A stretch of 64,000 nucleotides of DNA. It comes from Octopus sinensis. Lineage: Eukaryota. Below the pieces are notes generated by a model. The model did no database searches. It was not told where the DNA came from and was given only the letters and a program-made list of their open reading frames with translations. Below, piece by piece: positions 6,382-43,494 of this stretch (its first letter is position 1; the number at the start of each line of letters is the position of its first letter). Location: the NCBI RefSeq assembly GCF_006345805.1, contig NC_043002.1:496001-560000 (forward strand), written 5' to 3'. Both the position numbers and the translations under genes were made by a program.

Positions 6382-6452
6382 TTCCGTGCATTAGGAGAAT
6401 ATGGTGTTGCCGTCCTTCACATTTCACAAATTCAAAAGAAAGAACAGCAAGG
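6382..6452 (+). CDS. Internal exon of unidentified plus-strand gene (FRALGEYGVAVLHISQIQKKEQQG)
   Basis: Strong acceptor TTTTTTTCTTTTTTCATAG and donor GTAATA. Phase 0 in, phase 2 out, matching exon 14968. A phase-1 reading (PCIRRIWCC...) is also open. Confidence 0.55.
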
Positions 6453-6951
6453 GTAATATTTTTTCATTTTATGGAAAATGTATATCAATAGCTGAAAGGA
6501 TAAATGAAAAGTTGAAGCAAAGAATAATTTGATTGTTGAGATTTTCTTTTGCTGGAAAGAAAATTTGCTGAGGCAAAGAATGCTTGTTATTTTGAACTTT
6601 AGAAACGAAAAAAAGATATTGTTTTTATTCTTGGGGAGATGAGGCAGTAACATTAACCAAAATTATATTGATTCTGGCAGATTCTGGCACCTCTTCATGC
6701 AAATGTTAATTACTCTTCCCTCTAACTTTTTTTTTATTATGCCTTAGAAAACAAAAACTCATTAAAACCTGGTCTTTGGATTTTGTTCTGAACATCAGAG
6801 GCTCATAATCAGCATGGTGGAGATGGGGAACTACTCAGGAATAGCTGTATTCACTTTCAAGATAAAGTAATTTGTATTCAGAAGTCAAAGCAGTACTATT
6901 GTACTTTCACATTGGGAAAATTTCAAATGCTCTTGGGTTAGTTTATTAAGG

Positions 6952-6985
6952 ACTAGCAAAGATACCCAGTTTTACTTGGGGTTAA
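6952..6985 (-). mobile_element. Degenerate Helitron 3' terminus
   Basis: ACTAGCAAAGATACCCAGTTTTACTTGGG resembles the reverse complement of the hairpin+CTAG end at 9461-9488. Confidence 0.35.
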
Positions 6986-6999
6986 AATGGTATAGTTTG

Positions 7000-7000
<1 letters not shown>

Positions 7001-7043
<43 letters not shown>

Positions 7044-7051
7044 GTATATAT
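7001..7051. repeat. (TA)n microsatellite; another at 7348-7381
   Basis: Directly visible. Confidence 0.95.
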
Positions 7052-7347
7052 ATTACAATGCTGCACTTTCCCATATCACCTGTTTCACCATAACTGTAAT
7101 ATATAACTGTAGCTTCTAAGCTGAAGTGAAGACAGCATGTTCTTTGTCTATCTCCTTACCTTCTTGGAGATTGGAGGTAAAATTATACTAATGTGTCCAT
7201 CTGTTTTAATTTAATTAAATTCTGTCTTTATGCAGCTGAGGATTGCTCTACATTTAAATTGACGTAATGATTGCATTGTTCAATTAAATGGAGTTGCTTG
7301 AAACGATCGTACTGCATTACCTTTGGATATCCTTATTGCTTATTTTG

Positions 7348-7384
<37 letters not shown>

Positions 7385-8409
7385 TCTGAGCACATGATCA
7401 AGATCTCAGATCAAGTCACTTGCTATGCAAGTACATCTCTGTAAATTGAAAGATTATCTCTATGAAATGTTATATTGTTTTAATCGAAATGAAACTAAAA
7501 TTTCATATTGACACTGACCAGCCCTCACGTATAGTGCATTTAATAATGTATTCAACACAGAAAGACACATACTGTGAGATATATTCACACTCATACACTC
7601 ACACACATACATTCCCATACAGATACAGTCATATACAAAATATGAAGACATCGTTGTGGTTTGAAGTAAAAGTATAAAAGTGAAACAGAGTTGTGGTGGT
7701 GGTTAGAATTAAAAGTTAAAAAGTGAGACAATATCTCACATTACAATATATATGTTATTGTTTCACTTTTACTTTTTGTGTTTTGACGTAATAAGGAACC
7801 AGTGCCAATGTTGCATTGTTTTAATCCCCAAAAATTACATGTTGACATTCATAGGGCTTTGTAGTATTACCATGTAAAATTTCATTTGGTTTGGTTGAGC
7901 TGTTTGAGAATGTATTGGGGACAGACAGAGATACAATGGATTTCATATATATCTCTTATTATAAAAGGCAGATTTTATCTGCCTCCCTTTGTCAGTTATA
8001 GAAATCTACAATATAGGATTTCTTCAATTACAATTTACCTAGCATTTTTAAGAGTAGAATGCATCGGGTTTTGCCAAGTCCAGTTTTTAAAATTTAAACT
8101 CCAATTAAGCAAAATTTACAGAAAACTCACATTCTGGTGTGTATGTCAAATGCTTTTCTTAGTCTGGTTTACAGCACACGCAAACGCACACACACAGTGT
8201 GCAACGAATAAAGTGAAACTAGATGTAATATTTGTTTCTGTCTATCACGCTGATAGATACATGAGTAAAATGTATGGCAAGCTAACAGATAAGAGTGAGT
8301 GAAAATGTTCTTGGAAGAGAGTAAATAGTGACAGAGTGATTTGAGGAAGACTAAACTGAAAGTATGAAACAGTGTTTATGTATAAACAAACCGCCCGAAT
8401 TTACCTATT

Positions 8410-8815
8410 CAGGCACCCATGCCAACCCCCTTTGCTTGTGAAGACATGTTGGGGCAAGCGAAATCGAAATCGAATTGAACCAGCCAGGATCCCTGGTCTG
8501 GTGGTACGTAAAAAGTACTATCCGACTCGTGGCCGATGCCAGCACCGCCTCGACTGGCTTCCGTGCCGGTGGCACATAAAATACACCAATCCGACCGTGG
8601 CCGTTGCCAGCCTCGCCTGGCACCTGTGCAGGTGACACGTAAAAAGCACCCACTACACTCACGGAGTGGTTGGCATTAGGAAGGGCATCCAGCTGTAGAA
8701 ACATTGCCAGATTAGACTGGAGCCTGGTGCAGCCTTCTGGCTTCCCAGAACCCCGGTCGAACCGTCCAACCCATGCTAGCATGGAGAACGGACGTTAAAC
8801 GATGATGATGATGAT
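8410..8815 (+). mobile_element. RTE LINE 3'UTR copy, young subfamily, with (GAT)n tail
   Basis: Homologous to the 3'UTR of the RT-bearing copy at 31043-34119; about 98% identical to 39979-40382. Confidence 0.9.
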
Positions 8816-8849
8816 ATTTAAATGAGAATATCAGAGTAAATCTCTTTAG

Positions 8850-9215
8850 TACATTCGTGAAAACACGTATTATACTTCGTAAACACTTCAAATACAGTTT
8901 TGTACAAAAATCGAAGTGTAATTTTAATTCCGTGAATTATGGGAGATTTTTTTCCGAAATTTGTTCCTATTGTGTTTTCAAAATTTGTAATTCTGACAAA
9001 AAATGGATACGAATTTCATTATATCAAGCAGCGAGTCAGAATTCGAAGGATTTTCTACTGAAGACCTTCATAAATCTAACTCTATGACTGAAAAAAAAAA
9101 GCATCTTTATATAAGAGTGAAGTTGTGTGTGTGTCTCCTACGATTTAGATTTGTAACTACTCCCACATTTTGCGGTGCAGTTTAACCAAAAGCGGGTATC
9201 TTATAGTCGTGATTC
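8850..9215 (+). mobile_element. Possible pogo/Tigger-like DNA transposon 3' remnant
   Basis: SSSESEFEGF acidic tail motif and a terminal TCTTATAGTCG resembling Tigger-type TIRs; weak. Confidence 0.3.
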
Positions 9216-9488
9216 ATATCGAGCCCTTCTGGGTATTAGCGCGCGTCTATGATTTAAAAAAAATTTACCATCATATTTTTCCATTTTAATGCATTTTTTT
9301 CGCTTTTATATAAGGGAAGTAACTCTCTAAAAATATCTACGATGTGTCAACGATTTAAAAAAAAAATTTACCTTAATTTTTTTTCAATTTTTAATGCATT
9401 TTTTTGCTATTTTTTGGCTATAACTCTCTACAAATGCTTATATAGTTATTTCCCTTACAACCCGAGCAACGCCGGGCAATACTGCTAG
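9216..9488 (+). mobile_element. Non-autonomous Helitron 3' end
   Basis: CCCG-AGCAACGC-CGGG hairpin (9461-9476) followed by CTAG (9485-9488) then T, the canonical Helitron 3' terminus. The 5' boundary is uncertain. Confidence 0.65.
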
Positions 9489-9959
9489 TATATAATATAG
9501 ATGATAATGTAATTACCAATGCAAGCAAAATATATATTTTTACTCTAAATATCTAAATATACATGAAATGTGTTTATATATCAATAAATATATTTTTTAT
9601 ATTTATAAATCCACATTAAAGAATATAGCAGCTGTAAATCTAATGCTAATGTGGTTCTGGTTTTAAAGAAATAAGATTAAAAAAGAAACATGTTGATTGT
9701 TTCTTATCATTAATAAATAGCAAAAGTTAATTATTAATCTCTAATGTTCAAAGCATAAAAATCCAAAGACTGATTTTAAAAATTTCAAAAGCAGGATTAA
9801 AAAGACCCTACACTTATATGAATAAGTGCTTTGATATATATTTTTTTATGGAAGACAAAATCAATTTTAAAAATAGAAGAATATCAGTGATTAAATCAAC
9901 TTCCCAAAAATGTAAAGAAGAGACCTCCCAAAAGGCATTTATTGGGATTGATACCACCA

Positions 9960-10330
9960 CCATCATCATCATCATTATCATTTAACAGCTGTTTTCCATG
10001 CTGGCATTGGTTGCATGTTTTGATAGGAGCTGGAGAGCTGCACCAGGCTGCAACTGTCTGTTTTGGCATGGTTTCTACGGGTGGATGTCCTTCCTAACAC
10101 CAGCCATTTTACAGAATGTACTGGGTGCCTTCCCATGTGGTACTGGCATGGGTGCTTTCCCATGTGGTACTGGCATGGGTGTTTTTTACATGGTATCAGC
10201 ACTTGTGAGCTCACAAGACAAGGACTTTTCAGCTGAGAGATGGAGCAGGAGGGCATAGCTGTAAAGGACATACCTGTATGTATGTACAGATAGCCACAAT
10301 TTTACTTAGCTTGATGTCTTCTCAAACACA
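9960..10330 (-). mobile_element. Diverged RTE 3'UTR copy
   Basis: (CAT)n tail followed by the TTTCCATGCTGGCA...GGATGTCCTTCCTAAC core. Confidence 0.75.
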
Positions 10331-10444
10331 TCGAATTACTAGAAGTCTTGATTGAGAAAGACAATAATTGAAAAGGAGCTGCAAATGTTATTCATGTTTG
10401 TCTTCTGTTTCCTAGCAAGAAACAAATCATTGACCTGCACAAAA

Positions 10445-12150
10445 TAATAAGCCATTATTCAAAAAGCCTCAAAATAGTAATCATCATCTTAGGTATATCC
10501 TCTAGCTCATTGGGTATTTTGTTGTATACCCAGGCCAGAATAATTTTGAAAAGCACTCTAGAATCATGTAAAGTAGAAGAAAAGTCCAGTGAACTAGGTA
10601 CAGTACACTTGTCAGCTCTAGTGCATTCATTAAGGTGATATTCACCATAGGACCACCAGCCACCTGAAGATTGCCTTGGGACCATATGATGGGGTGAGGG
10701 CTGATTGATGCTGGATGCATGAACTTTGTCCAGTTCCATGCTTGAACTTAACTTTTCAATCTTAGCATATTGATGAGTTAGTCAGTGAGGTTTAAAAGAA
10801 AAGTAGTGGTCCAGAGTGAGTGACTGGATGATTCTTAAACGCAGGGCAAGTGATATCCTGAGGATATTTGTGCAAAGAGCATTGTATCTGCTTGAGCTAG
10901 AGGAGTTCAAGAAAACGGCTGATGGAAGGGATTCTGGTACTGACACTTTGGATGTTGTGGAATCTACTAATCTGTTGTGTTTGACATCAATTAAGAGGCT
11001 GAAATGATGGAAGAAATCACTTCCAAGAATTGGAGTTGACAATTTAGCAACTGTAAAATCCCAGTTGAAAACTCTTCTGAGATTGAGATGCAGGGTAATC
11101 CATTTTTCTCCAAAGATTACATTCAGAGAATGGCTAATAGCCTGGAGAAAAATTGGAGTGATGGTTTTTTGTTGCCTTGTACCAATTACTGTAGTGTTCA
11201 GGATGCTAATCTCTGCCCCAGTGTCTACAAGAAAATTGATATCAGTTGATTTGTTGCTGATGTGGAGGTGACTGACTTGGGAAGTGAGCCACATACAACT
11301 GCTGCCATCAGTTCCTGGCCACACTGATTCCCAAAGGAGAAAATGGAAATGAACATGGTGGAGAACACTTGTGAGCATTATTGTTGAATGCACAGTGATA
11401 CCAACACAGAGGCCAAACAGCTAAGTGGTACTTGGACTATGTGAATGCTGGACTTCTGCACTCCATGAGCAACTCCTGTTGTCACTTGGTTGAATCTTCA
11501 TCATATTAAATTACCTGTCTCTGTCTGAAAGTTGATTAAAGGGCTGCTATCAAAGTTAGCGGAAAAAGATGAACAGCAAGATCTTTATGGTTGTTGGGGT
11601 GGTGCTACTTGCATGGCAGTTGGCAGGGGGGATGAAACTTCTGTGATGTTATCTGCCAACTCCTCTATTTACATTGATTGTTTGGTAGCAGTGAGGAAAT
11701 GTTGGATTGCAGTTGCTTGATAAACAACTGTGAAATTGACTGGGTCCAAGGTGTTGTCTCTGAGCAACTGCTTTATTTGTTGGAGAAGTTGGCAAGGTCT
11801 TTTGTTTCCCAGTCCCTCTCTGATGAATAGTTGGTGCAACCATTGCTGCTGTGTATTTAATCAACTCTCACATGAGCGCCTTGTATGACACAATGCTAGC
11901 CCAGAGTTGTTACCAAATACTGGATCTCTGGTAGGAAGGTGTTGATCATGTCATTTAATGTACAGGGATGAAAAATTGCGCCTCCAGATAAAGAAATCAA
12001 ACTGTAGATCATGAGTCGAAAATGTTGGGGACTCACAAAGACAGAAGTTCTGGTCTGTATTAATAATGTTGCAACTGGCATTTCGAAAGGCATCTCAGCA
12101 TTGTTTTCCCAGCGGTGTTTTTCAAAGTATTTATCTTTTGGGGGTCACCA
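10445..12150 (-). mobile_element. Decayed Ty3/Gypsy LTR retrotransposon: PBS-like site, gag, protease and RT start
   Basis: TGGTGACCCCC PBS-like motif at 12150-12140; aspartic protease FLVDTGAEISIL; RT start PSPHHMVPRQSSGGW...DIPKMMITILRLFE (compare SPLHMVPK...DIPKTAITTPFGLFE); truncated before YxDD. Confidence 0.85.
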
Positions 12151-12396
12151 GTTCTAACAATATGAATATTTCTTTGTGTATTACTTGTGGAACAATTCAG
12201 TGTCAAGCTCATGTTGACTGAAAAAAGCACAAATTCTGTTGAGATTTTGAATGCAAAAATATTTATTTTAAAAAACTTTAACTGTGTGATGTTACTACAA
12301 ATGACAGAAAAGGTATTTAGACGGGTAAACAGTTCAACAGCTAATACGTGAAAGGAGTGAAAGGGATACTGTCTAGCAGCATATGTCCTACTGATT

Positions 12397-13366
12397 CATC
12401 ATCATCATCATTTAACATCCGCTTTCCATGCTGGCATGTGTTGGATGGTTTGACTGAGGACTGGTGAGCCAGAGGCTGCACCAGGCTCAATCTGATCTGG
12501 CAAAGTTTCTACAGCTGGATGCCCTTCCTAATGCCTCTATTTATAGTTTGTCTGTCCAAGAAAAAAGGTGCCCCCCAAAAAACCTACTGATAATATCTTG
12601 TTTACAAGATGTCTGAGAGGTCAGTTTTTTGATGACATCAATATTTGGGCAAAGGGTGTTCATGTTGATATAATGATTTCTACCTGAGTAGATTGGCCAG
12701 TTGACTGCTGACATCATCAACCTCTAGCAAATCCTGAATGTTGAAACAGCAATCTGGTTTTGATTCCTAGATGTTCTGGAACTGCCACATATTTCTGCTA
12801 AAGACTACAAATGCAGTATGTGCATTGTGTCATGTTAGCACATTTGATTGTGTGGAGGTGCAGTGTAGCAAAAGTAGGCCACTTACATCTATATAGGTAA
12901 AAACTTATTTAATGATTATCATCATCATCATCATCGTTTAACGTCTGATTTCCATGCTAGCATGGGTTGGACGGTTCAACTGGGGTCTGGGGAGCCCGAA
13001 GGCTGCACCGGGCCAGTCAGATCTGGCAGTGTTTCTACAGCTGGATGCCCTTCCTAACGCCAACCACTCCGAGAGTGTAGTGGGTGATTTTATGTGCCAC
13101 CGACACAGGTGCCAGACGAGGCTGGTGAACGGCCACGCTCGGATGGTGTTTTTTATGTGCCACCGATCAAAATACCTGAATATTAGGTTTTCATGGTTAG
13201 GTACAGAAGATACCCATAAATGCATTTCTCTATTGTGAACTTGTTTTTAAACGTGCAGCTTCAAAGTATTAGAGAACAAATCACTAAGTGAAGAGTTTTA
13301 TTCGACTTCATCATCATCATCATCATCATCGTTTAGCGTCCGTTTTCCATGCTAGCATGGGTTGGA
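12397..13366 (-). mobile_element. Three separate RTE 3'UTR pieces (12397-12537, 12917-13172, 13310-13366)
   Basis: Each begins with (CAT)n followed by the conserved TTTAAC/GCGTC...CCATGCTAGCATGGGTTGGA core or a close variant. Confidence 0.85.
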
Positions 13367-13759
13367 CTTAATTGTTGAAATACTGTTTATGACTTTGAAT
13401 AATGGAAAAAGACAAATGAAAATGCATTAAGTGAGCTTGACTAGAAGAGTGGAAACAATACAAGTTGGTCTTTGTCAGTGAGCTGCACAGCTCATATATG
13501 CAGGCTAAGATATCTGTGTGCAGCCACAATGCCATCTTAAAACAGAGAGCTGTTCTTTAGGGTTGTTGTTAAACCCCAAATTAGTTTTGAGTAAACCTAT
13601 GATCAGAGATAATTACCTGCCTTGTTTTTCCTTGATATTGAGCAAAAGAAAGGGGCTGTGTCCATGGGTTTTGCAGGCTCTCTGATACTTCTAAGATTTA
13701 GTTAATTTTAAAATGTTGCAAGTTGATGGGTGAAGAAAAACATGCTGGGAGCAATTTCT

Positions 13760-14700
13760 AGAGGGTCAACATTCTTAGAAGAATTGAGTAGTTTGAAAGG
13801 AGACTACAATATGAGTAAAAAGAGGAGAGATAGCATGTAGGTAAGATGGTTAAAGTGAGTTGAAGGAGAACTTCAGGTTGCCTGTCAGTTAGGTAGTCTT
13901 ACTTTAGTTGTGGTCTTGGCTGTTAAGAGCGTACAATATGGTTTTCTTGATATACATTGTAATTTGTGTGTTTATGCTGCTGAAGGCAACTAGAGTTGCA
14001 TGACATCATGGAAGAATGCTTTTCAGCCACTTTTTGTTCATAGAACTAAGTATATCTAGGACTAAATGATTCAGTGTATCTTCTCTTATATTTAAGACAA
14101 TAGCTTGTGATTTGTCAGGATTTGGCTGCATTGTCCTTCAGGTTGAGCAACTTTACAAAGGCTCTTTTGCAAACGTGGGTTTATTAGTTCAACCTTATGG
14201 TGCACTTTGTGGTTTAAAGATTCAGAATTAATTAGGGCTGAAGTATTATCTTGCTTTGATGAGGAAGTCTTTGTGCTCCAGTTTTGGTTTCGTTCATGAA
14301 AGAACAAGAAATTGTGAGGGGTCTAGGATTTGACAGCGGTTAGCCAGAAGGTATATTGAAAGAAAGCTTGCTTAATGTATAGTGACTTGTAATGACTGTT
14401 AACTTGGTCATCATTTTTTTGTTTCCATTGAAGAATATTTTCATGATCTCTAATGGAGGCAGTACAAGTGTTGTGTAATATAGCCGTTGCATATAGCGAA
14501 TGCATGTGCGCAGAAGATTGAGGGGTGAAGAGGTTATTGGTATAAGAGTGTAAATGATTAGAAAGCTTCTTAGGTTTTCTTTAGTGTACAGTAGTATAGA
14601 ACCCTTGGTTTCCACAATGCTTTCAAGACATACTGCAAAAGGAACTGTCTGGCTGGAAATTTTTGATCAAGAGATTAGATAAATGGAGTCTATAAGCAAA
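13760..14700 (-). other. Decayed ORF-like segment of unknown class, probably TE-derived
   Basis: Several abutting 60-90 codon minus-strand ORFs and a composition shift, with no recognisable motif. Confidence 0.25.
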
Positions 14701-14967
14701 CAACCAGATATATAAAATGGGGCCCTTTCTAATTACAACTCAATGAAAATACTCAGAAACCACTTCAGTTTAGGATGATTGTTCTTAGAGATTACAGATC
14801 TGTAATATAGTTAGATGTGCATCTCATAGGTTAAACTTTTTTTTACCTGAAATATCTGTCTTTTATCTTGACTAAAATGTAAAAAATCTCCAGTGATTCA
14901 TAAAACTAAGATGTAATTTTCTTTTACATAATGACTTTGTCTTATTAAATAATTTATTCTTTTTCAG

Positions 14968-15025
14968 ACATGATCTAAAATCAGGTCACCTGCAGCACGT
15001 TGTTTCTCCCACTCCTCGTGGAACG
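14968..15025 (+). CDS. Internal exon of unidentified plus-strand gene (HDLKSGHLQHVVSPTPRGT)
   Basis: Acceptor ATTCTTTTTCAG, donor GTTTGT; 58 nt, phase 2 in and phase 0 out, fitting both neighbouring exons. Confidence 0.7.
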
Positions 15026-15269
15026 GTTTGTATAATTTATTGTCTCATTAAAATGTTTTTTGAAATATAATTTTATGCTTATTTTCAAATTACTTAAACA
15101 TCAGTATATACAATTTTTATTTGTTTCTAATAGGCATTTTTTTTTTTTTTTTTGCAATAGTTTGTTTATGCAAGTTCAAACAAAGTTCAGGCTATTATCA
15201 TTTCACCTTTTTTTTTTTTTCTTGTCATATTTTGGAAAGTAGGATGAAGTTTGAAGGAGATGCAGTTGC

Positions 15270-15485
15270 GAAATAGCAGCCAACACCCTCGTCCATAGAC
15301 TTGTCTCTTTCTACCACTACAATGTTGTCTGCTCTCTCATCCAATGTCACCTCCACTTAGAGACATAGATTTCTGACTCACTCGTCTCTCTTTGTCATTA
15401 ATATTGTATTCACCATCCTAGGCACCACATTAACCACCCCTTCCTTCCCTGAACATTGGTCCTCTGGAATTCCTTTCCTGTTGTT
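15270..15485 (+). mobile_element. Old CR1/Jockey-type LINE 3' fragment
   Basis: Ends in LWNSFP, resembling the conserved LWNSLP of CR1/Jockey C-termini. Confidence 0.35.
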
Positions 15486-16299
15486 ACCAACTTTCAACTG
15501 CTTGTGAGGAACATTGTGTTCATCTCAGTAAACTCACCAAAAAGCCAATCCAGACAGGCCTACCCTGTTTATCTAATTGGTGTTTCTAATTTTGGGATGA
15601 GGAATTGGAAACTGTTTTCTTTCAACTATCATATTAGCTTACTGAAAGTCTCAAACCTGCAGAGTGCCATTTTTTTTTTTTTTTGTTGGGTGTTGTATCT
15701 ATTAGTAAAATTAAAATTGCTGGAACCAGTTACTACCTCACATCTAGCAACAGTAAATTATTCATTTACTCTTTACATGAGCAGAAAACTGCTCAAAGGG
15801 CAGTTTTCTGTAGTCTTAACCTCTCTTCTACACAAACTCAAAAGAGTCCATCTATGTGGTAGTTTAATTTGTTAGAAATAGCAGGGATTGCAATATATTC
15901 TAAGGCCTGTGGCATATCAAACAGCCATACTAACAAGTTGGCCCTTGGTAGTTTTGTAAATCAGGAAAATTTCATTTTATTAAAAACATTTTCATTTCAC
16001 AAATTCCTGAAGAGTGAATTACAGCTAAATGTTATTTACACATTTGCTTCTTAATTTGTGTACATTTTTCTTATTTGTTACAAATTTTCTTGTGAATCCT
16101 TAATTCGTCCAATAGCATGCACTCACTCAATAAATAAATTTAGAATAGCAAGCACTAACAGACAGTGTTTGAATTTATGAAGAATTACATTGGCATTATG
16201 TTGACCTCACTTATCCTCATAAAAGTCCTCAGTTTATTGTCTATGTACATATCAGAAGATTCTGTAACTTTATATGACAGTGAATTGGAATGCACTAGT

Positions 16300-16760
16300 C
16301 ATGATCATCATCATCATCGTTTAACGTCCACTTTCCATGCTAGCATGGGTTGGACGATTTGACTGAGGTCTGCACTAGACTCCAATCTGATCTGGCAGAG
16401 TTTTTACAGCTGGATGCCCTTCCCTAATGCCAACCACTCCGAGAGTATAGTGGGTGCTTTTATGTGTCACAGGCATGAGGGCCAGTCAGGCGATACTGGC
16501 AATGGCCACGCTCAAATGGTGCTTTTTATGTGCCACCTGCACAGGAGCTAGTCTACTGGCAACGACCTCGCTGAATGTTTTTTCACGTGACACCAGCACA
16601 AGTGCTAGTAAGGCGACGCAGGTAACGATCACGCTCGAATGGTGTTTTTAATGTGCCATCAGCTCAGAGGCCAGCTTGTTGCTCTGGCCCTAATCTCACT
16701 TGTATGGTACTCTTAGTGCTCCTCTAGCACAGATGCCAGTCATTGAATTTGATTTTGTCT
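16300..16760 (-). mobile_element. RTE 3'UTR copy with several internal modules
   Basis: (CAT)n tail, core, and repeated GGTGCTTTTTATGTGCC modules. Confidence 0.85.
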
Positions 16761-18513
16761 TTTATCCAATAAATAGAAGAAAAAAGTTTCATGACTTTTG
16801 CAATTCCTCAGACTTGTGAGACTGATGCTGCTGATGTTCAGCTTGACACCTGCAGTTCAATGTCTACAGGAAAAACATGGAGAGAGAACTAGAGGTCTTG
16901 TCTGAATGTTTATAACAGACAAGACTCTGCAAAAGGTACTCAAAAACTAGATGACGGTGGTTAATCCAGATTAGGAATACCACAGAAAAGTCATAAATAA
17001 AATTTCAACTCAGGACAATTTTTCTTCTGTCTGCAAAGTTTAGTTTGTACTAGTATGAACTGGAAAAAAAATCATATTGAAAAATTACTGGGGTTTCTTT
17101 TCCATTGATATATATTTGTATATTTTAGTATTAATAATGTATACACAGTTGAACAAAGGCAGGGGAGAGAGAGATAGATTTTCTACAAAAAAAAAAAAAA
17201 AAAAATGAAAATAACTGTGCAAGGAAAAAATGAAAATTATGTATTGAACTGAAAATAATTGTGCAAAGAAAACAGAAATGAAAATTATATGCTGAATTGA
17301 AAAAAAATATTTTGATTAAAATGGAACAAAATTTGAATTTTTAAGAATTTTGTAGACAATGGAACTTTAGTAATTGCTTTCTTTTAGTATAAGTTACACA
17401 ATTCCAATCCAAATAATTGAAAAGCAGTTTTCTCCATTGTAGTATAAAATGGCCATTTACCATATTGGGATAACATTCTTGATTTTGTTTGCTCTTAGAT
17501 GAAAATTTTTCAGCTTCTCATGCTCCGAGAATATTTCTTCAGCTATCATTTATGACATCCTTTCAACAGCAAATTATTTGATGATATATTTCTGGCTAAT
17601 GATTTTTCTAGTATACCTCATGTTTAAATTTTGTTACAAAATATTTAGTTTCTTACATGTCATGGTTGAATGTAAAATAGCTAATAATTCAGTGTTACAT
17701 GAAGTCATAGCTATAGATTTTTGTTTGTAATTATTAAATTTTGAATTTGAATATGAATTTTTCATTTTGTTAAGTATGTCCATCAGTAATGTTAAGTTAT
17801 TCCCCAAATCTACTTTAAAGCAGATTTTGAGCCTCCATACACAAAAGTACTTTCCATTGAATATTGGAATAGAACATTTCTTGTCATTATTTTCACCAAT
17901 CATCTGGATATTAATGTAGCTATTTAAAAAAAAAAATTATTTCATGCACTCAGAATCAAATTCCTTGTATTGAAGCCTACATTTTGATTATTTTCTTTCA
18001 TAGGGCAATTTTGCTCTCTTATATGACTTATTCCCAACTCTATGTAGTCTGTTATTCTCAATGAATTTGTTGCTTTTCAAATTGTCATTTTCATGGAATG
18101 TTTTATGTATCGGTCTTACTAGCTCTCAAATATTACCTTTTATTGTTTCTCTTTTGTGATGTTTGTTGCTTAAAATGTTTTCCCTATCTTGTATTGTTGT
18201 GTTTAAGGAAAGGCATTGTTAGTTATTTGGAGCTGTAGGGGTTCTAAACCTAGCATTTATGTATTTTCGAACAATATGATATTGATAATTGCTGCTTACT
18301 GGTAATCTGTTGTGCCCTGACAACATAATTTCAAAATAGTAATCTTTTACACTAATCCATGAGAAATAGTTGAACATGAGGTAAACCAATTAACAAGTAA
18401 TGTCTGGACCTTCTGGACAAGTATTTTATAGACAAATAAAATGAGTTTAATTTAAATTTATGTAATATTCAATTAATTTCTAATATATTTTTTATTCTTG
18501 TGTTTTAATGCAG

Positions 18514-19061
18514 TCAAGACACAACCTTGGGTCTCTGGGGGATGTTAGTAGACAGAGTTACAGATCTGAAAAGTCACGAGCATCTTCCCAAGATTCTATC
18601 GACAAACCAACTGGCAGAAGTGTGAGAGGTCGAAGGGATCCACATTTTCAAGCCAGAGTCCAAGATTCTGACTTTGATGACAAAAGTGACAGTTCCAGGA
18701 GTCGAGATACCAGAGACGGCCATATTCACCCTGATGAGAGGCTTCAAAGTGCACCTAGAGGTGCACCGAGGGGAATGCCAAGGGGAATGCCTAGAGGTAT
18801 GCCTAGGGGTATGCCTAGAGGTATGCCGAGAGGTATGCCAAGAGGTATGCCAAGAGGAATGCCTAGAGGCATGCCCAGAGGAGCACCTAGAGGGGCACCA
18901 AGGGGTATGCATCCGCCACCATTTGATCATGGTTATCAACCTCAAGGAAATAGAGGTGGTCAAATGCGATTTCATTCTCCGCCTGGAAATCAGTCTCATC
19001 ACAGAGAAAGAATTGAATATGACCCTCGAGGACGCCATGTTGAAACCCATCAGAGTTCAAG
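18514..19061 (+). CDS. Large low-complexity exon with PRG[M/A] x13 of unidentified plus-strand gene
   Basis: Acceptor TTTTAATGCAG, donor AG|GTTTGT; 548 nt, phase 0 in, phase 2 out; GC-rich island in AT-rich flanks. Confidence 0.85.
18754..18909 (+). repeat. Coding 12-bp tandem repeat, 13 units (10 PRGM, 3 PRGA)
   Basis: Pro uses all four codons, Gly all four, Arg AGA/AGG; the only amino-acid variation is Met/Ala. Confidence 0.95.
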
Positions 19062-19784
19062 GTTTGTGAAATGGTTTTTGTTTTTTCATTTGAACAAATT
19101 AACAATGTCAATTAAGTTTGGGTCTACTGAATTAGAATTATGTAACCCAAGATAAAGTTATTTTTCATAATAAATCAGGACTCAAATTCATTTACATTTA
19201 CAAACTTTCAATGTTTTGAAGACTACTTTGTTGAAAGTCTGTATTTCAGACTTTCCTCCTCATAATCGTGTAACATCTGTTTCCCATCCTGGCCTGGATC
19301 GGGTTGCTTGACAGGGTCCGATCGGTCAGACGACCGCGTTGTGTTCCAGTGTCTGCTTTGGCTGGATTTCTGTGGCTGGATTCTTTTCTAATGCCAACGG
19401 CTTAACAGAAAGTGCTTTTTCTTTTTTGTGGAACCTACATTCGTGATGTTGCCATGTAACTCACTAAATTCTTTTCTCCTTCTACTGCAATAGGGAAGGA
19501 GGCAACTTTATGCTGGGAGAAAAATGTTAAAGTATAGAAGAAGGGTCCAGAACAGATTTCATGTTGTAGAGGAGATATATGGCTACACATTTATATAAGA
19601 GTGGGAGTAATTGGTGGGGGACTGGAAAGAAAAAAATGTTGGTGATGAAGTGTTATGGTGGATGCTCAAAGTATGATGATGATGATGATGATGATGAATA
19701 GAAGTGTGTGTGTGTGGGGGGGTAGAAGAGGGAGTAGGGGTAGGTAGATTGGTGGGAGGGGATGAGTTGATTACACTGACCCAA

Positions 19785-19925
19785 GTGTTTTGCTGGTACT
19801 TAGTTTAACAACTCTGAAAGGATGAAAGCAAAGTTGACCCCAGCAGAACCTGAACTCAGAATGTGAAGACAGAGACCAAATGCTTAGTTGCATTTTGTCC
19901 AGCATGATCCTGCCAGCTGAGGAGA
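19785..19925 (-). mobile_element. Diverged tRNA-derived SINE, family A
   Basis: Homologous to 62231-62437 in reverse orientation. Confidence 0.6.
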
Positions 19926-20476
19926 AGGATGAGAATAAAGGGGATGGTGGGTGTGAGTGCAGAGTCAGACATAATGTGTGGTGAGTGAGAGATGTGTGGT
20001 GATAGGGACCTTGGAGAGGAAACAAAAACCTTAGTAAATAGTCTTGTATAAATATATCTGGTTTTTTGTTAAAAAATATTTGAAGATTAAAATCTCTTAG
20101 AAGGGATGTATCATCATTTAACATCTTTTTTCCATGCTGGCAAGTTGGGCCCAAATGTCAAAATCATAAAGTAAAATATAATTTGTAAAACAAAGTATTA
20201 GAATTTTAAAATGGTTTTTGTTGATCCACACATAGATTCAAGAGATTGCGTAAATCCAGGATTAATAATTGACAAAAATTTGATGTGTATGTTTTATTAA
20301 TTCTGCCTTAAATAAAATATATTGTGATCTGAAAACCAAAGTGTGTTGATTACAACCTGACTGCTGTACTTTCAGCCTTTAGCATTCTGATTATTCTGTC
20401 AAATGTAGTGCTTATTTATTCAAATAGGTTTGAGATTTTGATGGTGTGACTATTTCGAAAATGATGTTGTTGACTA

Positions 20477-20601
20477 GGCCAATTTGGACATAAAATGGGT
20501 AGAATGTGGAAAGTTTAAATGTTGAAGGTGATTAAATCTAATGAACCTCTTTCTAGGGAGTTTTAAAGCCAAAACTATTTTAGAGTCTAATTAATGATAA
20601 C
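20477..20601. repeat. 125-bp inverted repeat arm (partner 22609-22733); a second 35-bp pair at 20346-20380 / 21232-21266
   Basis: Manual reverse-complement alignment: 4 mismatches in 125 bp and 1 mismatch in 35 bp. Confidence 0.9.
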
Positions 20602-21269
20602 TAAATTTTAATCCTTCTACTTTTTATTTATAGTCTTCATCTCGTGCAAGACTGAATCTTTCACCATCTTAAGTGATAACAAGCTAAAAATAGACAAAAA
20701 ATATTTGTATTAACACAGCAGTCCTCTTTCTTCAGGATATCCTCCATACCAAATTATTTAGGAGTACCAAAGAAAAGCCAGTACAGACCAGTGTTGAGGA
20801 AGGGGAACTTGGATCTTAGTATATCTAATCTAAAGAGATCTACAATGACACAAATACCAGCTCTGTCTTCTGGTCCCATCAGACCATGAAACAATTTGTC
20901 TGCTCCACCTGTTTTGATCCTTAACTAAAGAGGAGGGGTTTTCATACCTGCATGATAAAGTCAAGGTTCACTTGGTTAATAGTGACATTTTCTGGCAAAC
21001 TCAGTTGGCTTATCCAGTTGGGGGTCTCACTAGTAAGGGATAAAAATCTATATCAAATTGTGTATATCTAGCTTTGGACCTGTCATTTATATTCTTAAGC
21101 AAGTTTATAACAGTGTTGCTATTGACTCAGTACCACAGTTTAGTAGTTTCCATAATTCTATTAAGAGAGAAGACTATGCTGGTATGGTCATGAAATGGCT
21201 TCTGCATGAAGATGGCTACTCAAAGAAAGTTAAAGGCTGAATGTACAGCAGTCAGGTTGTAATCAAGGC

Positions 21270-21693
21270 ACTTGGGAAGCTGTGGAAGGGGTAGACCCAG
21301 GAAGACATGGCATGAGGTGGTGAGAAAAGGTCTTTAGATGCTGGGCCTCACTGAAGAGATGACAAGGGACCAGGACTTGTAATTGGGAAGACACATAAAG
21401 CTAAGTAAAATTGAGGCTATCCATACATACAGGCATGTCCCTTTTTGGCCATGCTCCCCCACTCCCTCTCCCAGCTGAGAGTTCGTCTTGTAGGTACCAG
21501 TGCCATGTAAAATGCACTTGTGCTGATGGCACATAAACTGTACCAGTACACTGTGAAGTGGTTGGTATTAGGAAGGGGACCTAGCATTAAAGATGCCAAA
21601 ACAGACAATTGGAGTCTGGACAGCTCTTCAGCTCCTGTCAAACCATCCGATGCATGCCAGCATAGAAAACAGATATTAAATGATGATGATGAG
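21270..21693 (+). mobile_element. Diverged RTE 3' end (ORF tail plus UTR)
   Basis: GRPRKTWxEVV-like ORF end followed by the UTR core and GATGATGAT tail. Confidence 0.7.
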
Positions 21694-21744
21694 TATTTTT
21701 TTTTGTTTGGCTATTAAACCTATTTCAGTTCTTGCTGGGTTCAC

Positions 21745-22140
21745 AGGTGGGCTTATTGCTAAAATTAGGTTTGTGATCTTTTTAAAGTTATAAAAGCTTC
21801 CCTTTTAGGTAAGCATTCTAACCTATCTTCAATTTGACTTCTTTTAGCAAAGAATTTAGTGTCATCATTAATGCTTTTATAGCTATCTATATTGGCTTTC
21901 TTATATTTAGTGGAGGTACTATTACGTAGATCATTATTGATTTCATACAAGTTATTAGTTTTAGAGTTTTTTAAAGTTTCTAATCTCAAATTTTTAGTTA
22001 AACTTGGAAAGGGTTATAGTGCTTACCAAATTTAATGTCTAAGTCTAAGATTGCTTCCAAAATGGGGCTAAATCTTTCAATGTAGGTGTGTATTTATAGG
22101 TCTTTAAGCCATGAGTTTTTTTGTGTGCCAGTTGGTGATA
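21745..22140 (-). mobile_element. Penelope-like element RT N-terminal fragment
   Basis: ORF 21765-21989 ends in LECLPKREAFITLK, resembling the AFITLKDHK motif I associate with invertebrate Penelope-like RTs. Confidence 0.5.
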
Positions 22141-23166
22141 CAAGCTTGCCCGTCTGTTGTACTACCAGAAGCAAAAAAGACTTATAGTAGTTTATATTTT
22201 AAATCCTGTCTTTATTAAATATTTATTTCTCACTGGATGGAGGAGGACTTTTGTTGTTCCCACTAATAATGGAACAGTACACACACACACAGTTATAATA
22301 CATTGGTTTAATTGCTGATGAAAGCATTCAAATTCGTTATTAAATGGTTCTATTTGCTTACCTGTTTTAGTGACAAAAGTACCTTGTGATATTTAGTTAC
22401 ATCCCTTCTCAGGTCAAATCCTGTCCAAAATTACTTCCAAGTGTTGAGGCCAATATAATGAACCAAGTTCTTGAAGGTAGTGTGCCCCTCCCCCCAATGT
22501 CTGTTGTGCAAATGATTGAAATCAGTTTTTGGTGACTTACAATTATGACTTTAAATTGTGAAAGCTGACACGAGATGAAGACTATAAAAAGTAGTATGAT
22601 TAAAAGTTTGTTATCATTAATTAGACTCTAAAATAATTTTGGCTTTAAAACCTCCTAGAAAGAGGTTCATTAGATTTAATCACCTTTAACATTTAAACTT
22701 TCCACATTCTACCCATTTTATGTCCAAATTGGCCAGAGCCAGCCTCTCACACCTTTCAACTCTAATATCTACGAACCTAAATAAAAGGTGAAGTAGTATA
22801 TTTTCAGTTCCATCAGTTTCTACCATGAGTTTTAAATAACTCAGAAACAGCTCACGTTGATTCTATTGTTTCCATTTTTTTTGTAATTCTAGTTTCAGGA
22901 TGTTGGACACCTGTTTTAGTTATTAGAAAATTGCTGTGTAAATGAATTAACGAGATGGTTCATGAATGAAATTGATTAAAAATTATTTGAAAGTTGTTTG
23001 TTTTTTTCTTTGGTATTGGGATGTTTCCATTCTTTAGCTCTGATAACAAATTCAAATCGATGGTTACTAAATGATAACATTTTCAAACTAAAAGACATTA
23101 TGAGAAGCTTATTGCATTATGATTTGAGTGATTTTATTTTTGAAAACTTTTTTCTTTAATTTGCAG

Positions 23167-23233
23167 GCAACCTACTTCTTCAGACGATTCCAGAGACATA
23201 AAAGTTGATACATCCTCTGAGTCAGAAATTTGA
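23167..23233 (+). CDS. Terminal coding exon of unidentified plus-strand gene (R QPTSSDDSRDIKVDTSSESEI*)
   Basis: Acceptor TTTTTCTTTAATTTGCAG; phase 2 completes AGG; TGA at 23231-23233 followed by AT-rich UTR-like sequence with ATTAAA hexamers. Confidence 0.7.
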
Positions 23234-26371: not shown

Positions 26372-26985
26372 CTTTTCAACAACAACATGAAACATTAAGA
26401 GAGCAAGTCTCTGATGGTCTTTGGGAAGAGACTTAAAGTAATTAGTCACCCCCCCCCCCTTAGGGCTGATTCATACAGAAAGGAAAACATTGAAATGGTT
26501 GGTAAGAACAAACTAGAAATGGTGATCAGAATCTGTTGTTTTGTTTGGTTGATGTTTGAGACAAGTTTGTAGAGGAGTTGGGGTTGAATATGGAATTACT
26601 TTATAGGCCAGCATAATAATTACCAAAAAATTTAACAAGATCACTCAGTAATTAAATTTTAAAAGCAGCTTAAAATACTTAGGGCCAGCCATTACCTGTG
26701 AATGAGTATCACTTGGTACCATGCTTTTGCTATTCATTTAGTCACAAGCAACTATTAACTCTCTCAAGACTCCAGTTTTTTTGACCGAAAGGAATATCCA
26801 GGAGGTGACAGCCAAAAAGAGAGAAGCATACCAGTATGAAACTGGTACTTCATTTCCAGTTGAATGGAAACATGAAGTGCCTTGTCCAAGGATACACTGC
26901 CTAGCTGAGCAACTGAACCTACATCATTATGATCATGAGCCAAAGAGCTTAATCACTAGGCCATATGCTTTCAACTAAAATACTG

Positions 26986-26991
26986 TTTATT
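26986..26991 (-). promoter_or_regulatory. Candidate polyadenylation signal AATAAA for the tectonic gene
   Basis: TTTATT on the plus strand, 41-46 nt past the stop codon; the hexamer is common in this AT-rich DNA. Confidence 0.35.
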
Positions 26992-27031
26992 GGTGTCAAC
27001 TAAAGACTCTTTTACTGAGCTTTTATGAATT

Positions 27032-27212
27032 TTAGAAGTCCAATAGTAACCAAGATTGTGTTATGGTAAGGAATGAGATGAAGAGAAACGTGAGATATGT
27101 GACCAAATTATAAGCATACTCATCGAATGTTTTTTGAATTGTTAAAGGATAGAGGATTTCTTGCCAACAGCTGTTCATCCAGCACTGTTTTATTTTGTAG
27201 AAATCATAATTC
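27032..27212 (-). CDS. TCTN2: Tectonic (TCTN2-like) last coding exon with hydrophobic C-terminal segment
   Basis: R NYDFYKIKQCWMNSCWQEILYPLT...LVTYLTFLFISFLTITQSWLLLDF* resembles the TCTN2 CWPQLLYP motif plus TM tail; acceptor CTTTCAG; phase 2. Confidence 0.85.
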
Positions 27213-34119: not shown

Positions 34120-34172
34120 CTTAATTGTAAAAGTTGATTTGATTAAATATAATGGAAAAATTTGACCTTTAC

Positions 34173-43432: not shown

Positions 43433-43494
<62 letters not shown>

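What the first reader, a model, noticed from the sequence alone, without database searches (positions are those of the whole stretch)
6382..23233. Unidentified gene ending in a selected (PRGM)n arginine-rich repeat
Seen: four exons splice in phase to give FRALGEY...QQG-HDLKSG...RGT-SRHNLG...(PRG[M/A])13-HPPP...SSR-QPTSS...SEI*. Apart from Met/Ala, all repeat variation is synonymous, so the peptide rather than the DNA repeat appears to be conserved. Known: Pro/Gly/Met-rich arginine motifs in splicing factors such as SmB are CARM1 substrates, and RG-rich disordered tails bind RNA and Tudor domains. Inference: a lineage-specific methyl-arginine or condensate module on a protein I cannot name.
Basis: partly seen in the sequence, partly recalled or inferred. 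Interest (0 to 1): 0.7.

Follow-up and report, generated by a model that had tools for sequence, protein, structure and literature searches.

The report
Membrane protein tail with PRGM repeats
The window holds the last four exons of an unstudied two-pass membrane protein known only from molluscs and related invertebrates; its floppy arginine-rich tail carries, in octopods only, thirteen Pro-Arg-Gly-Met units kept by selection, and what they do is untested.

Summary
Four exons (6382-6452, 14968-15025, 18514-19061, 23167-23233) have canonical AG/GT borders and join in phase to give 247 aa ending in TGA. The array at 18754-18909 is 13 x PRG[M/A], and every difference within the P, R and G codons is a synonymous third-position change.

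The gene can now be placed. It is the octopod orthologue of the Argonauta hians protein labelled 'uncharacterized protein LOC115213486'. Exon lengths match (71/58/.../67 nt), and so does the convergent tectonic neighbour. It belongs to an undescribed family, with no Pfam or PDB match, found in molluscs and more distantly in other spiralians. The family has:
- a two-helix membrane core, whose exon lies upstream of the window;
- a juxtamembrane beta-hairpin and helix;
- a long disordered Arg/Pro/Gly-rich tail that differs in each lineage;
- a C-terminus that always fits S-x-hydrophobic (usually E-S-x-hydrophobic; here SSESEI).

PRGM units occur only in the window and in Argonauta. Between these two, synonymous sites are saturated (pS 0.77) while pN is 0.13, so the peptide is under purifying selection.

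The host is a membrane protein, not a splicing factor. The best reading is a membrane-tethered array that presents many arginines.

The parts
6382..6452 (+). Coding exon, 71 nt (second coding exon by comparison with Argonauta). It encodes FRALGEYGVAVLHISQIQKKEQQG, the juxtamembrane beta-hairpin and the start of a helix.
   Evidence: AG/GT borders and phase. The tblastn match to P0001 aa 110-132 is 91% identical and ends at the exon edges. The Argonauta exon is also 71 nt. The AF2 model puts strands at 108-113 and 117-122 and a helix at 123-137.
14968..15025 (+). Coding exon, 58 nt. It encodes HDLKSGHLQHVVSPTPRGT and holds the family-wide L-K-S-G motif.
   Evidence: The Argonauta exon is also 58 nt. 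In the transcript contigs L002-L004 the sequence matching this exon directly follows the sequence matching the previous exon (L002 477-545 then 546-602).
18514..19061 (+). Large coding exon, 548 nt. It encodes the Ser-rich and acidic region, the PRGM array and the region after the array, all predicted to be disordered.
   Evidence: It is the only frame without stops in both species. The equivalent P0001 residues ~150-396 have pLDDT below 50.
18625..18657 (+). Motif [11 protein letters not shown]. Eight of its eleven residues are invariant across the three aligned cephalopod sequences, and the motif is duplicated in Argonauta.
   Evidence: Alignments.
18754..18909 (+). Array of 13 x 12 nt encoding (PRG[M/A])13. 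It carries +13 charge and no acidic residue.
23167..23233 (+). Last coding exon, 67 nt including the TGA stop at 23231-23233.
   Evidence: The Argonauta exon is also 67 nt.
23213..23230 (+). C-terminal SSESEI. The family-wide C-terminus always has Ser at -2 and L/I/F at 0, usually with Glu at -3, which is the pattern of a class I PDZ ligand.
   Evidence: C-termini of 23 family members.

Best explanation
SHOWN. The finding is the 3' four-fifths of a real protein-coding gene. It is the octopod orthologue of the protein labelled 'uncharacterized protein LOC115213486' in Argonauta hians. The first coding exon (about 109 aa, carrying both membrane helices) lies upstream of the window. The protein belongs to an undescribed family that is well conserved across Mollusca and detectable in nemerteans, annelids, brachiopods and flatworms. 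The family has a two-helix membrane hairpin, a juxtamembrane beta-hairpin plus helix, a disordered tail of about 200 aa, and a C-terminus that always fits S-x-hydrophobic (usually E-S-x-hydrophobic).

The tail keeps its composition in every mollusc (Arg 16-27%, plus Pro, Gly and Asp) but not its sequence. Each lineage has its own short repeat: RGPP, RRPPDD, DDRRRH or RGRG. The (PRGM)13 array is the version seen in the two octopod sequences. It arose by tandem duplication of a 12-nt unit before the lineages of the window and of Argonauta split. Purifying selection on the peptide has held it since.

INFERRED.
- The tail is cytosolic (positive-inside rule; no Cys).
- The array works as a membrane-tethered block that presents many arginines: 13 Arg at a fixed 4-residue spacing in a Pro/Gly context, flanked by Ser/Asp-rich segments.
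- It binds acidic or aromatic-cage partners through many weak contacts. Candidates are WW, Tudor or SH3-type domains, RNA, or acidic lipids.
- It is a plausible substrate for arginine methyltransferases.
- The C-terminal S-x-hydrophobic end docks to a PDZ-type scaffold.

Gene identity and selection: about 0.95. Cytosolic multivalent Arg-presenting module: about 0.5. Any particular partner class: 0.3 or less.
For: Gene model:
- Canonical splice sites and phase.
- The tblastn matches to P0001 end at the exon edges.
- Exon lengths are identical, 71/58/67 nt.
- Collinear tectonic exons lie downstream on the minus strand.
- Transcript contigs L002-L004 from a related cephalopod-like species join the homologous exon sequences.

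Family:
- 44 hits in the word-indexed search.
- 34 hits in the exhaustive HMMER search.
- Source names show Tubulanus, Calicophoron, Owenia, Lingula and Macrostomum.
- No Pfam family.
- No PDB relative by sequence or by fold.

Architecture: AF2 gives H34-63, H70-107, strands 108-122 and H123-137; nearly all of residues 154-396 have pLDDT below 50.

Topology: K+R counts in ten members are 1-3 in the N flank, 5-7 in the C flank and 2-3 in the loop.

Selection:
- Only synonymous changes occur in the P, R and G codons.
- Window versus Argonauta overall: pS 0.67, pN 0.16.
- Array only: pS 0.77, pN 0.13.

Lineage specificity and shared composition.

Charge layout.

Literature:
- PGM motifs are CARM1/PRMT5 substrates (PMC3575585).
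- CARM1 prefers Pro-flanked Arg, including 'PR' (PMC5458078).
- WW domains bind PGM, PPR and PR ligands (PMC8409303).
Against: - No RNA or protein data for the window's own species. An exact-sequence look-up of the exon ORF found nothing.
- Exon 1 is not in the window, so membership of the membrane core rests on orthology, not on sequence read here.
- Topology, PDZ binding, methylation and every partner are inferred.
- The Met position tolerates Ala and Gly, so the 'PGM' flavour may be incidental.
- The order G-M-P-R-G probably differs from that of SmB-type PGM motifs (recalled, not checked here), and no similarity to SmB was detected.
- 'Octopod-specific' rests on two octopod lineages only.
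- The taxon of the squid-like sequences P0002 and P0004 is not verified.
- Synonymous sites are saturated, so the size of dN/dS is unreliable.
- Which repeat unit in one species corresponds to which in the other is arbitrary.
Confidence: 0.5

Rival explanations
1. The array is a dedicated methyl-arginine module. CARM1 and/or PRMT5 methylate the 13 Arg, and Tudor-type readers or condensate partners then bind.
For: - Every Arg is preceded by Pro, the 'PR' context enriched at CARM1 sites (PMC5458078).
- The composition is Pro/Gly/Met, as in PGM motifs that CARM1 and PRMT5 methylate (PMC3575585).
- RG dipeptides are spaced 2 residues apart, which meets the poly-RG pattern.
- P, R and G are under strong purifying selection.
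Against: - Nothing was tested directly.
- The host is a two-pass membrane protein, unlike the known nuclear and RNA-processing PGM substrates.
- No sequence similarity to SmB or SF3B4 tails was found.
- Met is the least conserved position.
- PMC5458078 disputes a role for Gly and Met in CARM1 recognition.
- Other molluscs keep an Arg/Pro tail with no RG or PGM character, so methyl-RG reading cannot be the family's ancestral function.
Confidence: 0.3
2. An electrostatic switch against the membrane. The +13 block lies on acidic inner-leaflet lipids. Phosphorylation of the flanking Ser/Asp-rich segments releases it and exposes the C-terminal PDZ-type ligand, as described for TARP/stargazin tails.
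For: - A cationic block of +13 with no acidic residue sits between Ser-rich, acidic segments.
- It is tethered to a membrane hairpin.
- The C-terminus fits S-x-hydrophobic in all 23 members.
- The TARP precedent: an Arg-rich cytoplasmic domain binds acidic lipids and is released by phosphorylation (PMC10528344).
Against: - The array lies about 120 residues from the membrane.
- It has no hydrophobic or aromatic anchors other than Met.
- In most other molluscs the tail's Arg is balanced by Asp/Glu, which fits lipid binding poorly.
- No experiment supports it.
Confidence: 0.15
3. A structural spacer. The tetrapeptide repeat forms a semi-rigid polyproline-II or beta-turn rod that sets the distance between the juxtamembrane domain and the C-terminal motif, with no specific ligand.
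For: - Strict 4-residue period with Pro and Gly.
- The nearest PDB sequence matches are other period-4 repeats: PSGQ, NANP and NGMN.
- Unit number is similar in the two octopods, 13 versus about 12.
Against: - A mere spacer would not need Arg to be invariant in all 13 units.
- AF2 gives no confident structure there, with pLDDT about 40-45.
- Argonauta mixes 4- and 5-residue units (PRGM and PPRGM), which breaks strict periodicity.
Confidence: 0.15
4. A neutral replication-slippage product in a tolerant low-complexity tail, with no function of its own.
For: The tail's sequence turns over quickly across molluscs, and each lineage has a different short repeat.
Against: - The units differ at wobble positions only (P 2e-4 to 1e-9), so they are old rather than recently slipped.
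- The peptide has survived saturation of synonymous sites between the window and Argonauta.
Confidence: 0.05
5. Not this frame or strand: the repeat is non-coding, or is read antisense as PLG[I/M/A].
For: The antisense frame shares the wobble positions, and a 158-aa antisense ORF exists at 18574-19050.
Against: - The antisense frame has 3 stops within the window exon and 7 in Argonauta.
- The sense frame has none in either.
- The sense product is collinear with orthologues from end to end, including the last residues SSESEI.
Confidence: 0.01

Closest known systems
Argonauta hians protein labelled 'uncharacterized protein LOC115213486' (P0001, 396 aa; locus L001)
   Same: - Orthologue, 53% identical over all 247 window-encoded residues.
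- Same exon lengths and phases.
- Same convergent tectonic neighbour.
- Same RGRRDP.FQ.R motif, a PRGM/PRGA array, and an identical C-terminus DTSSESEI.
   Different: - Argonauta has about 12 RG units, several of them 5 residues long (PPRGM), plus PRGG units.
- It has a 42-aa internal duplication that the window lacks.
- Its introns are much shorter: the gene is 10.4 kb, against more than 23 kb in the window.
PGM (Pro/Gly/Met-rich) arginine motifs of SmB, CA150, SF3B4, U1C and PABP, which are CARM1 and PRMT5 substrates
   Same: Same amino-acid palette (P, G, M around R). Arg is flanked by Pro. The motif is repeated many times in a disordered region (PMC3575585, PMC5458078).
   Different: - The residue order probably differs: here G-M-P-R-G with a strict 4-residue period, whereas I recall G-M-R-P/G for SmB (from memory, not checked here).
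- No detectable sequence similarity.
- The host is a membrane protein with no Sm or other RNA-processing domain.
- Methylation is untested.
RG/RGG (GAR) motifs of RNA-binding proteins
   Same: Thirteen RG dipeptides 2 residues apart fit the spacing rule for poly-RG motifs (definition recalled from Thandapani et al. 2013, not read here). The squid-like relatives have true RGRGRGG stretches at the same place in the tail.
   Different: There is only one RGG in the window's tail. Pro and Met replace the usual Gly/Phe/Tyr neighbours. No RNA-binding domain accompanies it.
Cytoplasmic tails of TARPs (stargazin, gamma-8)
   Same: This is a functional analogy only. Both have a membrane-anchored, disordered, Arg-rich cytoplasmic tail with Ser-rich stretches and a C-terminal class I PDZ-type ending (PMC10528344).
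   Different: No homology. TARPs are four-pass claudin-like proteins, and the PMP22_Claudin match here is far below threshold. Their Arg-rich segment is not a tandem repeat. Here everything is inferred.

Membership tests
Spiralian two-pass membrane protein family, defined here (orthologues of LOC115213486) | N-terminal core with two membrane helices joined by the LRHRHVYL...F.GP loop | not testable with these tools
   The exon encoding it (327 nt in Argonauta) is not in the window. tblastn with P0001 and P0002 finds nothing credible for aa 1-109.
Spiralian two-pass membrane protein family, defined here (orthologues of LOC115213486) | Juxtamembrane F-R-x-x-G-x-Y-G-V-x-V hairpin followed by L-K-S-G | tested here: met
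   FRALGEYGVAV and DLKSG are encoded at 6382-6452 and 14968-15025. These columns are invariant in alignment A1 and conserved in the family alignments.
Spiralian two-pass membrane protein family, defined here (orthologues of LOC115213486) | Arg-rich (at least 16%) disordered tail ending in a C-terminus with Ser at -2 and L/I/F at 0 (usually Glu at -3) | tested here: met
   The window tail is 16% R, 12% P and 12% G and ends in SSESEI. All 23 members compared end in S-x-hydrophobic.
Spiralian two-pass membrane protein family, defined here (orthologues of LOC115213486) | Orthology: same exon structure and same neighbouring gene as the Argonauta locus | tested here: met
   Exons of 71/58/67 nt are identical in length. 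Tectonic exons are collinear on the minus strand.
PGM motif (CARM1/PRMT5 substrate class) | Arg embedded in Pro-, Gly- and Met-rich sequence | tested here: met
   The array consists only of P, R, G, M and A. Definition from PMC3575585.
PGM motif (CARM1/PRMT5 substrate class) | Arg is actually methylated by CARM1 and/or PRMT5 | not testable with these tools
   This needs mass spectrometry or an in vitro methylation assay.
PGM motif (CARM1/PRMT5 substrate class) | Sequence relationship to the known PGM tails (SmB, SF3B4, U1C) | tested here: not met
   phmmer of the array plus flanks against all PDB chain sequences at E<=10 returns only unrelated period-4 repeats, and no Sm or SF3B4 chains.
RG/RGG motif | Three or more RG or RGG within 0-4 residues of each other | tested here: met
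   13 consecutive RG with a spacing of 2 residues. The rule is recalled from the literature and was not read here.
Class I PDZ-binding C-terminus | [S/T]-x-hydrophobic at the free C-terminus | tested here: met
   The window ends in S-E-I-COOH. S-x-[L/I/F] holds in all 23 family members. The pattern alone is weak evidence.
Class I PDZ-binding C-terminus | Binding to a PDZ domain | not testable with these tools
   This needs a peptide or PDZ array, or a pull-down.
Collagen-like or other structural Gly-repeat proteins | Gly every third residue (G-X-Y) | tested here: not met
   The period is 4 residues or 12 nt.
Splicing-factor families used in public names of relatives (PRP38B-like, CWC22, CPSF6-like) | Presence of the catalytic or structural domain of those families | tested here: not met
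   No Pfam domain was found in the window product, P0001, P0002, P0016 or nine distant relatives. The precomputed Pfam column is '-' for all 44 hits. These names come from the low-complexity tails.

The most novel reading that the evidence does not exclude
An undescribed, spiralian-restricted family of small two-pass membrane proteins acts as membrane anchors for Arg-rich disordered tails. These tails would nucleate or recruit condensate-like assemblies at a membrane and dock to PDZ scaffolds through the conserved S-x-hydrophobic end. In octopods the tail would have been rebuilt into a 13-unit PGM/poly-RG array read through arginine methylation. That would be a membrane-bound counterpart of the methyl-arginine tails known from spliceosomal proteins.
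Probability: 0.12. Interest if true: 0.65.

Novelty: new variant of a known kind. Interest (0 to 1): 0.4.

Why it matters
1. It also shows that several public names for relatives ('pre-mRNA-splicing factor 38B-like', 'CWC22 homolog', 'CPSF6-like', 'circumsporozoite-like') are artefacts of low-complexity tails on a membrane protein.

2. The family is a clean natural experiment in how disordered regions evolve. Its membrane core and C-terminal motif are well conserved across molluscs. Between them lies a tail whose composition is kept while each lineage invents a different short repeat. The octopod PRGM array shows that such a lineage-specific repeat can then be held fixed by purifying selection.

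3. If the array is methylated, it would extend PGM and RG methyl-arginine signalling from nuclear RNA-processing proteins to a membrane protein.

None of this is surprising in kind. Arg-rich low-complexity tails and PDZ-type endings are common, so the interest is moderate.

Tried and rejected
- Pfam scans of the window product, P0001, P0002 and ten relatives gave only sub-threshold noise: Coat_X, DUF236, Sre, Atthog, Claudin, Tetraspanin.
- A PDB sequence search with the core profile gave one hit at E=0.11, an unrelated membrane subunit.
- A Foldseek search of the AF2 model against the PDB had a best E of 0.5. The hits were generic helical hairpins such as ExbB and pore-forming toxin helices, and I rejected them.
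- A third word-indexed search with a 17-sequence core profile added only one further Macrostomum protein (P0076) and no new taxon.
- I found no homologue outside Spiralia in any search.
- An exact-sequence look-up of the exon ORF (18508-19155) found no contig.
- Literature searches for LOC115213486, for six relatives' locus names and for PRGM repeat strings returned nothing.
- Rfam found no RNA family in the window.
- The SmB-like reading was checked by sequence and not supported.
- The collagen-like reading is rejected because the period is 4, not 3.
- The KDEL-type ER retrieval reading of the ...ESEI/ESEL ending is rejected. The -4 and -3 residues do not fit that signal as I recall it, and the tail is predicted to be cytosolic.
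- The antisense coding reading is rejected because of stops.

Full report
**1.

The four segments are 6382-6452, 14968-15025, 18514-19061 and 23167-23233. Each is preceded by a pyrimidine tract and AG, and each except the last is followed by GT. Their lengths are 71, 58, 548 and 67 nt, 744 nt in all. Joined in frame they give 247 codons and a TGA stop at 23231-23233. The product reads FRALGEY...QQG|HDLKSG...RGT|SRHNLG...SSR|QPTSS...SESEI*.

Tandem Repeats Finder reports a period-12 array. Read codon by codon it is exactly 13 units at 18754-18909: PRGA, nine [16 protein letters not shown]. The Pro codon appears as CCT, CCA, CCG and CCC. Arg appears as AGA and AGG. Gly appears as GGT, GGA, GGC and GGG. 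All 17 departures from the consensus are synonymous third-position changes. The only amino-acid difference is ATG versus GCA.

**2. The pattern is more than chance**

About 30% of single-base changes in CCT-AGA-GGT are synonymous. The chance that all changes are synonymous is 2e-4 for the minimum of seven independent events. It is about 1e-9 if all 17 are independent.

The antisense frame reads PLG[I/M/A] and uses the same wobble positions, so this pattern alone does not identify the strand. The strand is settled by other evidence:
- Only + frame 1 is free of stops across the whole exon, in the window (0 stops in 182 codons) and in the Argonauta orthologue (0 in 222).
- The antisense frame has 3 and 7 stops in the two species.

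**3. What the gene is**

A search with the 247-aa product found one full-length relative. This is a 396-aa Argonauta hians protein whose source name is 'uncharacterized protein LOC115213486' (P0001, E 4e-91). A 367-aa protein from transcriptome contigs also matched (P0002).

Several lines support the gene model and orthology:
- tblastn of P0001 against the window gives four matches whose ends coincide with the four exons: aa 110-132, 133-153, 153-375 and 375-396.
- In the Argonauta locus (L001) the gene has five coding exons of 327, 71, 58, 668 and 67 nt. The 71, 58 and 67 nt exons match the window exactly in length and phase.
- The first Argonauta exon encodes residues 1-109. Nothing in window 1-6381 matches it, so the window starts inside intron 1.
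- Downstream in Argonauta lies a tectonic (PF07773) gene on the opposite strand. The window has a tectonic first-exon ORF at 58173-58973(-). Collinear tblastx blocks lie at 34157-34309, 46619-46780, 52720-52839 and 58353-58913. The two loci are therefore syntenic and the genes orthologous.
- In the transcript contigs L002-L004, the sequence matching window exon 6382-6452 is directly followed by the sequence matching exon 14968-15025 (L002 477-545, then 546-602). This is cross-species mRNA support for that junction.

RNA data from the window's own species could not be obtained.

**4. The family**

A profile of the non-repetitive part found 44 proteins in the word-indexed database. It found 34 in an exhaustive HMMER scan of 1.84 billion representatives.

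The strong hits are molluscs: Ruditapes, Mya, Dreissena, Mizuhopecten, Pinctada, Crassostrea, Saccostrea, Solemya and Haliotis. Weaker hits (E 1e-8 to 1e-3) align convincingly over the core. By source name they are a nemertean (Tubulanus), a trematode (Calicophoron), an annelid (Owenia), a brachiopod (Lingula) and a flatworm (Macrostomum). All are labelled uncharacterised. I found nothing outside Spiralia.

The family has no known relative:
- No Pfam family matches (the precomputed Pfam column is '-').
- No PDB chain is related by sequence.
- The AF2 model has no significant structural neighbour.
- No paper mentions the locus names.

Several relatives carry names such as 'pre-mRNA-splicing factor 38B-like', 'CWC22 homolog', 'CPSF6-like', 'basic salivary proline-rich protein' or 'circumsporozoite protein-like'. 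Given the shared membrane core and the absence of the corresponding domains, these names come from the low-complexity tails.

**5. Architecture**

AlphaFold2 was run on P0001 with a 36-sequence alignment. It predicts:
- an N-terminal helix at 7-25;
- two long hydrophobic helices at 34-63 and 70-107, with pLDDT up to 97;
- a beta-hairpin at 108-122;
- a helix at 123-137;
- nothing confident afterwards, with nearly all of residues 154-396 below pLDDT 50.

The window therefore encodes the hairpin, the helix and the whole disordered tail.

I counted Lys and Arg in ten members. There are 1-3 in the 15 residues before helix 1, 5-7 in the 15 residues after helix 2, and 2-3 in the short loop. By the positive-inside rule both termini, and so the tail, face the cytosol. 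This is an inference. The window-encoded part has no Cys and one N-x-S sequon.

**6. The tail across the family**

All 23 members compared have tails with 16-27% Arg, 5-26% Pro, 5-14% Gly and 8-17% Asp. Their sequences are not alignable, and each lineage has its own dominant short repeat:
- RGPP, RRGP or PRGP in Solemya and in some other bivalve-like sequences (several from unnamed transcript contigs);
- PDDR and RRPP in other bivalves;
- DDRR and RRHD in Haliotis;
- RGRG and RGGP in the squid-like sequences;
- PRGM in the window (10 exact PRGM) and in Argonauta (8).

No other member has a single PRGM. Met is 4-5% of the two octopod tails and 2% or less elsewhere.

The first search also carried the array as part of the query, against 5.8 billion clusters. 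Apart from the Argonauta orthologue, it recovered only a DnaJ protein with an unrelated GMPxGMP stretch. Long PRGM arrays were therefore not found in any other sampled protein.

Every member ends with Ser at -2 and a hydrophobic residue at 0 (DESEL, DESDL, SESIL, DESSF, TESEF, EDSQI, SESEL, SESEI), and most have Glu at -3. This fits the class I PDZ-ligand pattern. The pattern is shown; binding is inferred.

**7. Selection on the array between species**

I codon-aligned the window and Argonauta coding sequences over 242 codons (Nei-Gojobori).

| Region | pS | pN |
|---|---|---|
| All 242 codons | 0.67 | 0.16 |
| Before the array | 0.63 | 0.12 |
| The 52 array codons | 0.77 | 0.13 |
| After the array | 0.65 | 0.25 |

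Synonymous sites are saturated, so the size of dN/dS (about 0.1-0.2) is only indicative. Which unit corresponds to which between species is also arbitrary. The qualitative result is still clear. The peptide repeat has been kept over a time in which silent sites were randomised.

Argonauta has about 12 RG units. Some are lengthened to PPRGM, and Ala or Gly sometimes replaces Met. The constrained core is therefore P-R-G, and the fourth position is the loosest.

**8. How it most likely works**

Shown:
- a real, conserved coding exon;
- a disordered, probably cytosolic tail on a two-pass membrane protein;
- a +13 block with no acidic residue, flanked by Ser/Asp-rich segments;
- Arg, Pro and Gly invariant in the array;
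- a conserved C-terminal S-x-hydrophobic ending.

Inferred: the array is a membrane-tethered block that presents many arginines and engages partners through many weak contacts. Three partner classes are compatible.

(a) Methyl-arginine writers and readers.
- PGM motifs are CARM1/PRMT5 substrates (PMC3575585).
- CARM1 sites are enriched in Pro, including a 'PR' motif. The same study disputes a role for Gly and Met (PMC5458078).
- WW domains bind PGM, PPR and PR ligands (PMC8409303).

(b) Acidic lipids, switched by phosphorylation, as in TARP tails (PMC10528344).

(c) No specific partner, that is, a PPII or turn-type spacer.

I give the general 'multivalent Arg module' reading about 0.5. I give the methyl-arginine version about 0.3, and the lipid-switch and spacer versions about 0.15 each. 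Neutral slippage (0.05) and a different frame or strand (0.01) are disfavoured.

**9. Comparison with what is known**

The closest relative is the uncharacterised Argonauta orthologue.

The closest known kinds of sequence module are PGM motifs and RG/RGG motifs. The array meets their compositional and spacing definitions. It has no detectable sequence relationship to SmB-type tails: a PDB sequence search with the array returned only unrelated period-4 repeats (OCM3 PSGQ, circumsporozoite NANP, RON2 NGMN). Its host also lacks any RNA-processing domain. It is not collagen-like, since its period is 4. The TARP comparison is a functional analogy only.

**10. Verdict**

I rate it a new variant of a known kind. 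It is an Arg-rich PGM/RG-type low-complexity array in an unusual host, an undescribed spiralian membrane-protein family. Interest is moderate (0.4).

Noticed in passing
window 24000-59000, minus strand (first coding exon ORF 58173-58973; further blocks at 34157-34309, 46619-46780, 52720-52839): A tectonic (TCTN, PF07773) gene lies convergent to the finding's gene, as in Argonauta. It spans roughly 25-35 kb here against 6.3 kb in Argonauta, and the extra length appears to be mostly repeats.
   Followed up: partly
window 10782-11393 (-), 31986-32618 (+), 43091-43639 (-), 44988-45752 (-), 4993-6015 (+): Transposable-element remnants are scattered through the window. A retroviral-type aspartyl protease ORF sits inside the 8.5-kb intron of the finding's gene. 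There are two reverse-transcriptase fragments and a Tc1/mariner-like transposase (HTH_Tnp_Tc3_2 + DDE_3). A 340-aa ORF in intron 1 has no Pfam match.
   Followed up: partly
window ~33100-33610, 36800-37340, 42515-42713, 47729-48028, 50031-50144, 53927-54244; L001 ~26900-27420: A dispersed element with protein-level similarity (44-57%) occurs at six or more places in the window and inside the Argonauta tectonic gene. It is a repeat family shared by both genomes.
   Followed up: no
L001 14064-14731 (Argonauta exon 4); P0001 aa ~187-270: The Argonauta orthologue carries an internal duplication of about 42 aa (RGRRD.NFQPR...DTRDGYRYHDDRPRGAPRG) that the window lacks. The tail therefore also evolves by larger segmental duplication.
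   Followed up: partly
window 18574-19050 (-): A 158-aa antisense ORF runs across the array and reads PLG[I/M/A]. Its wobble positions coincide with those of the sense frame, so 'only synonymous variation' is nearly true on both strands. Stops elsewhere in the exon, and more of them in Argonauta, rule it out as coding.
   Followed up: yes
family members P0012, P0020, P0023, P0024, P0027, P0028 (not in the window): Public names of relatives (CWC22 homolog, basic salivary proline-rich protein 2-like, PRP38B-like, circumsporozoite protein-like, CPSF6-like) look like annotation artefacts caused by the Arg/Pro/Asp-rich tails. All of them share the two-helix membrane core.
   Followed up: yes
P0001 aa 59-77 (exon 1, upstream of the window): A very strongly conserved stretch in molluscs is the end of helix 1, the short inter-helix loop and the start of helix 2 (T-L-R-x-R-H-V-Y-L ... 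F-x-G-P). Most of these residues are invariant in 36 sequences. This suggests a functional site on the non-cytosolic side or within the membrane.
   Followed up: no
L005/L006 (Logan SRR11869391 and SRR11869390), protein P0006: A 113-aa called ORF is 82% identical to Argonauta exon 1 and then runs on as '...VSNI', apparently reading past the splice donor. It is probably exon 1 of another octopod, possibly the window's species or a close relative. Species and linkage to the window were not established.
   Followed up: partly
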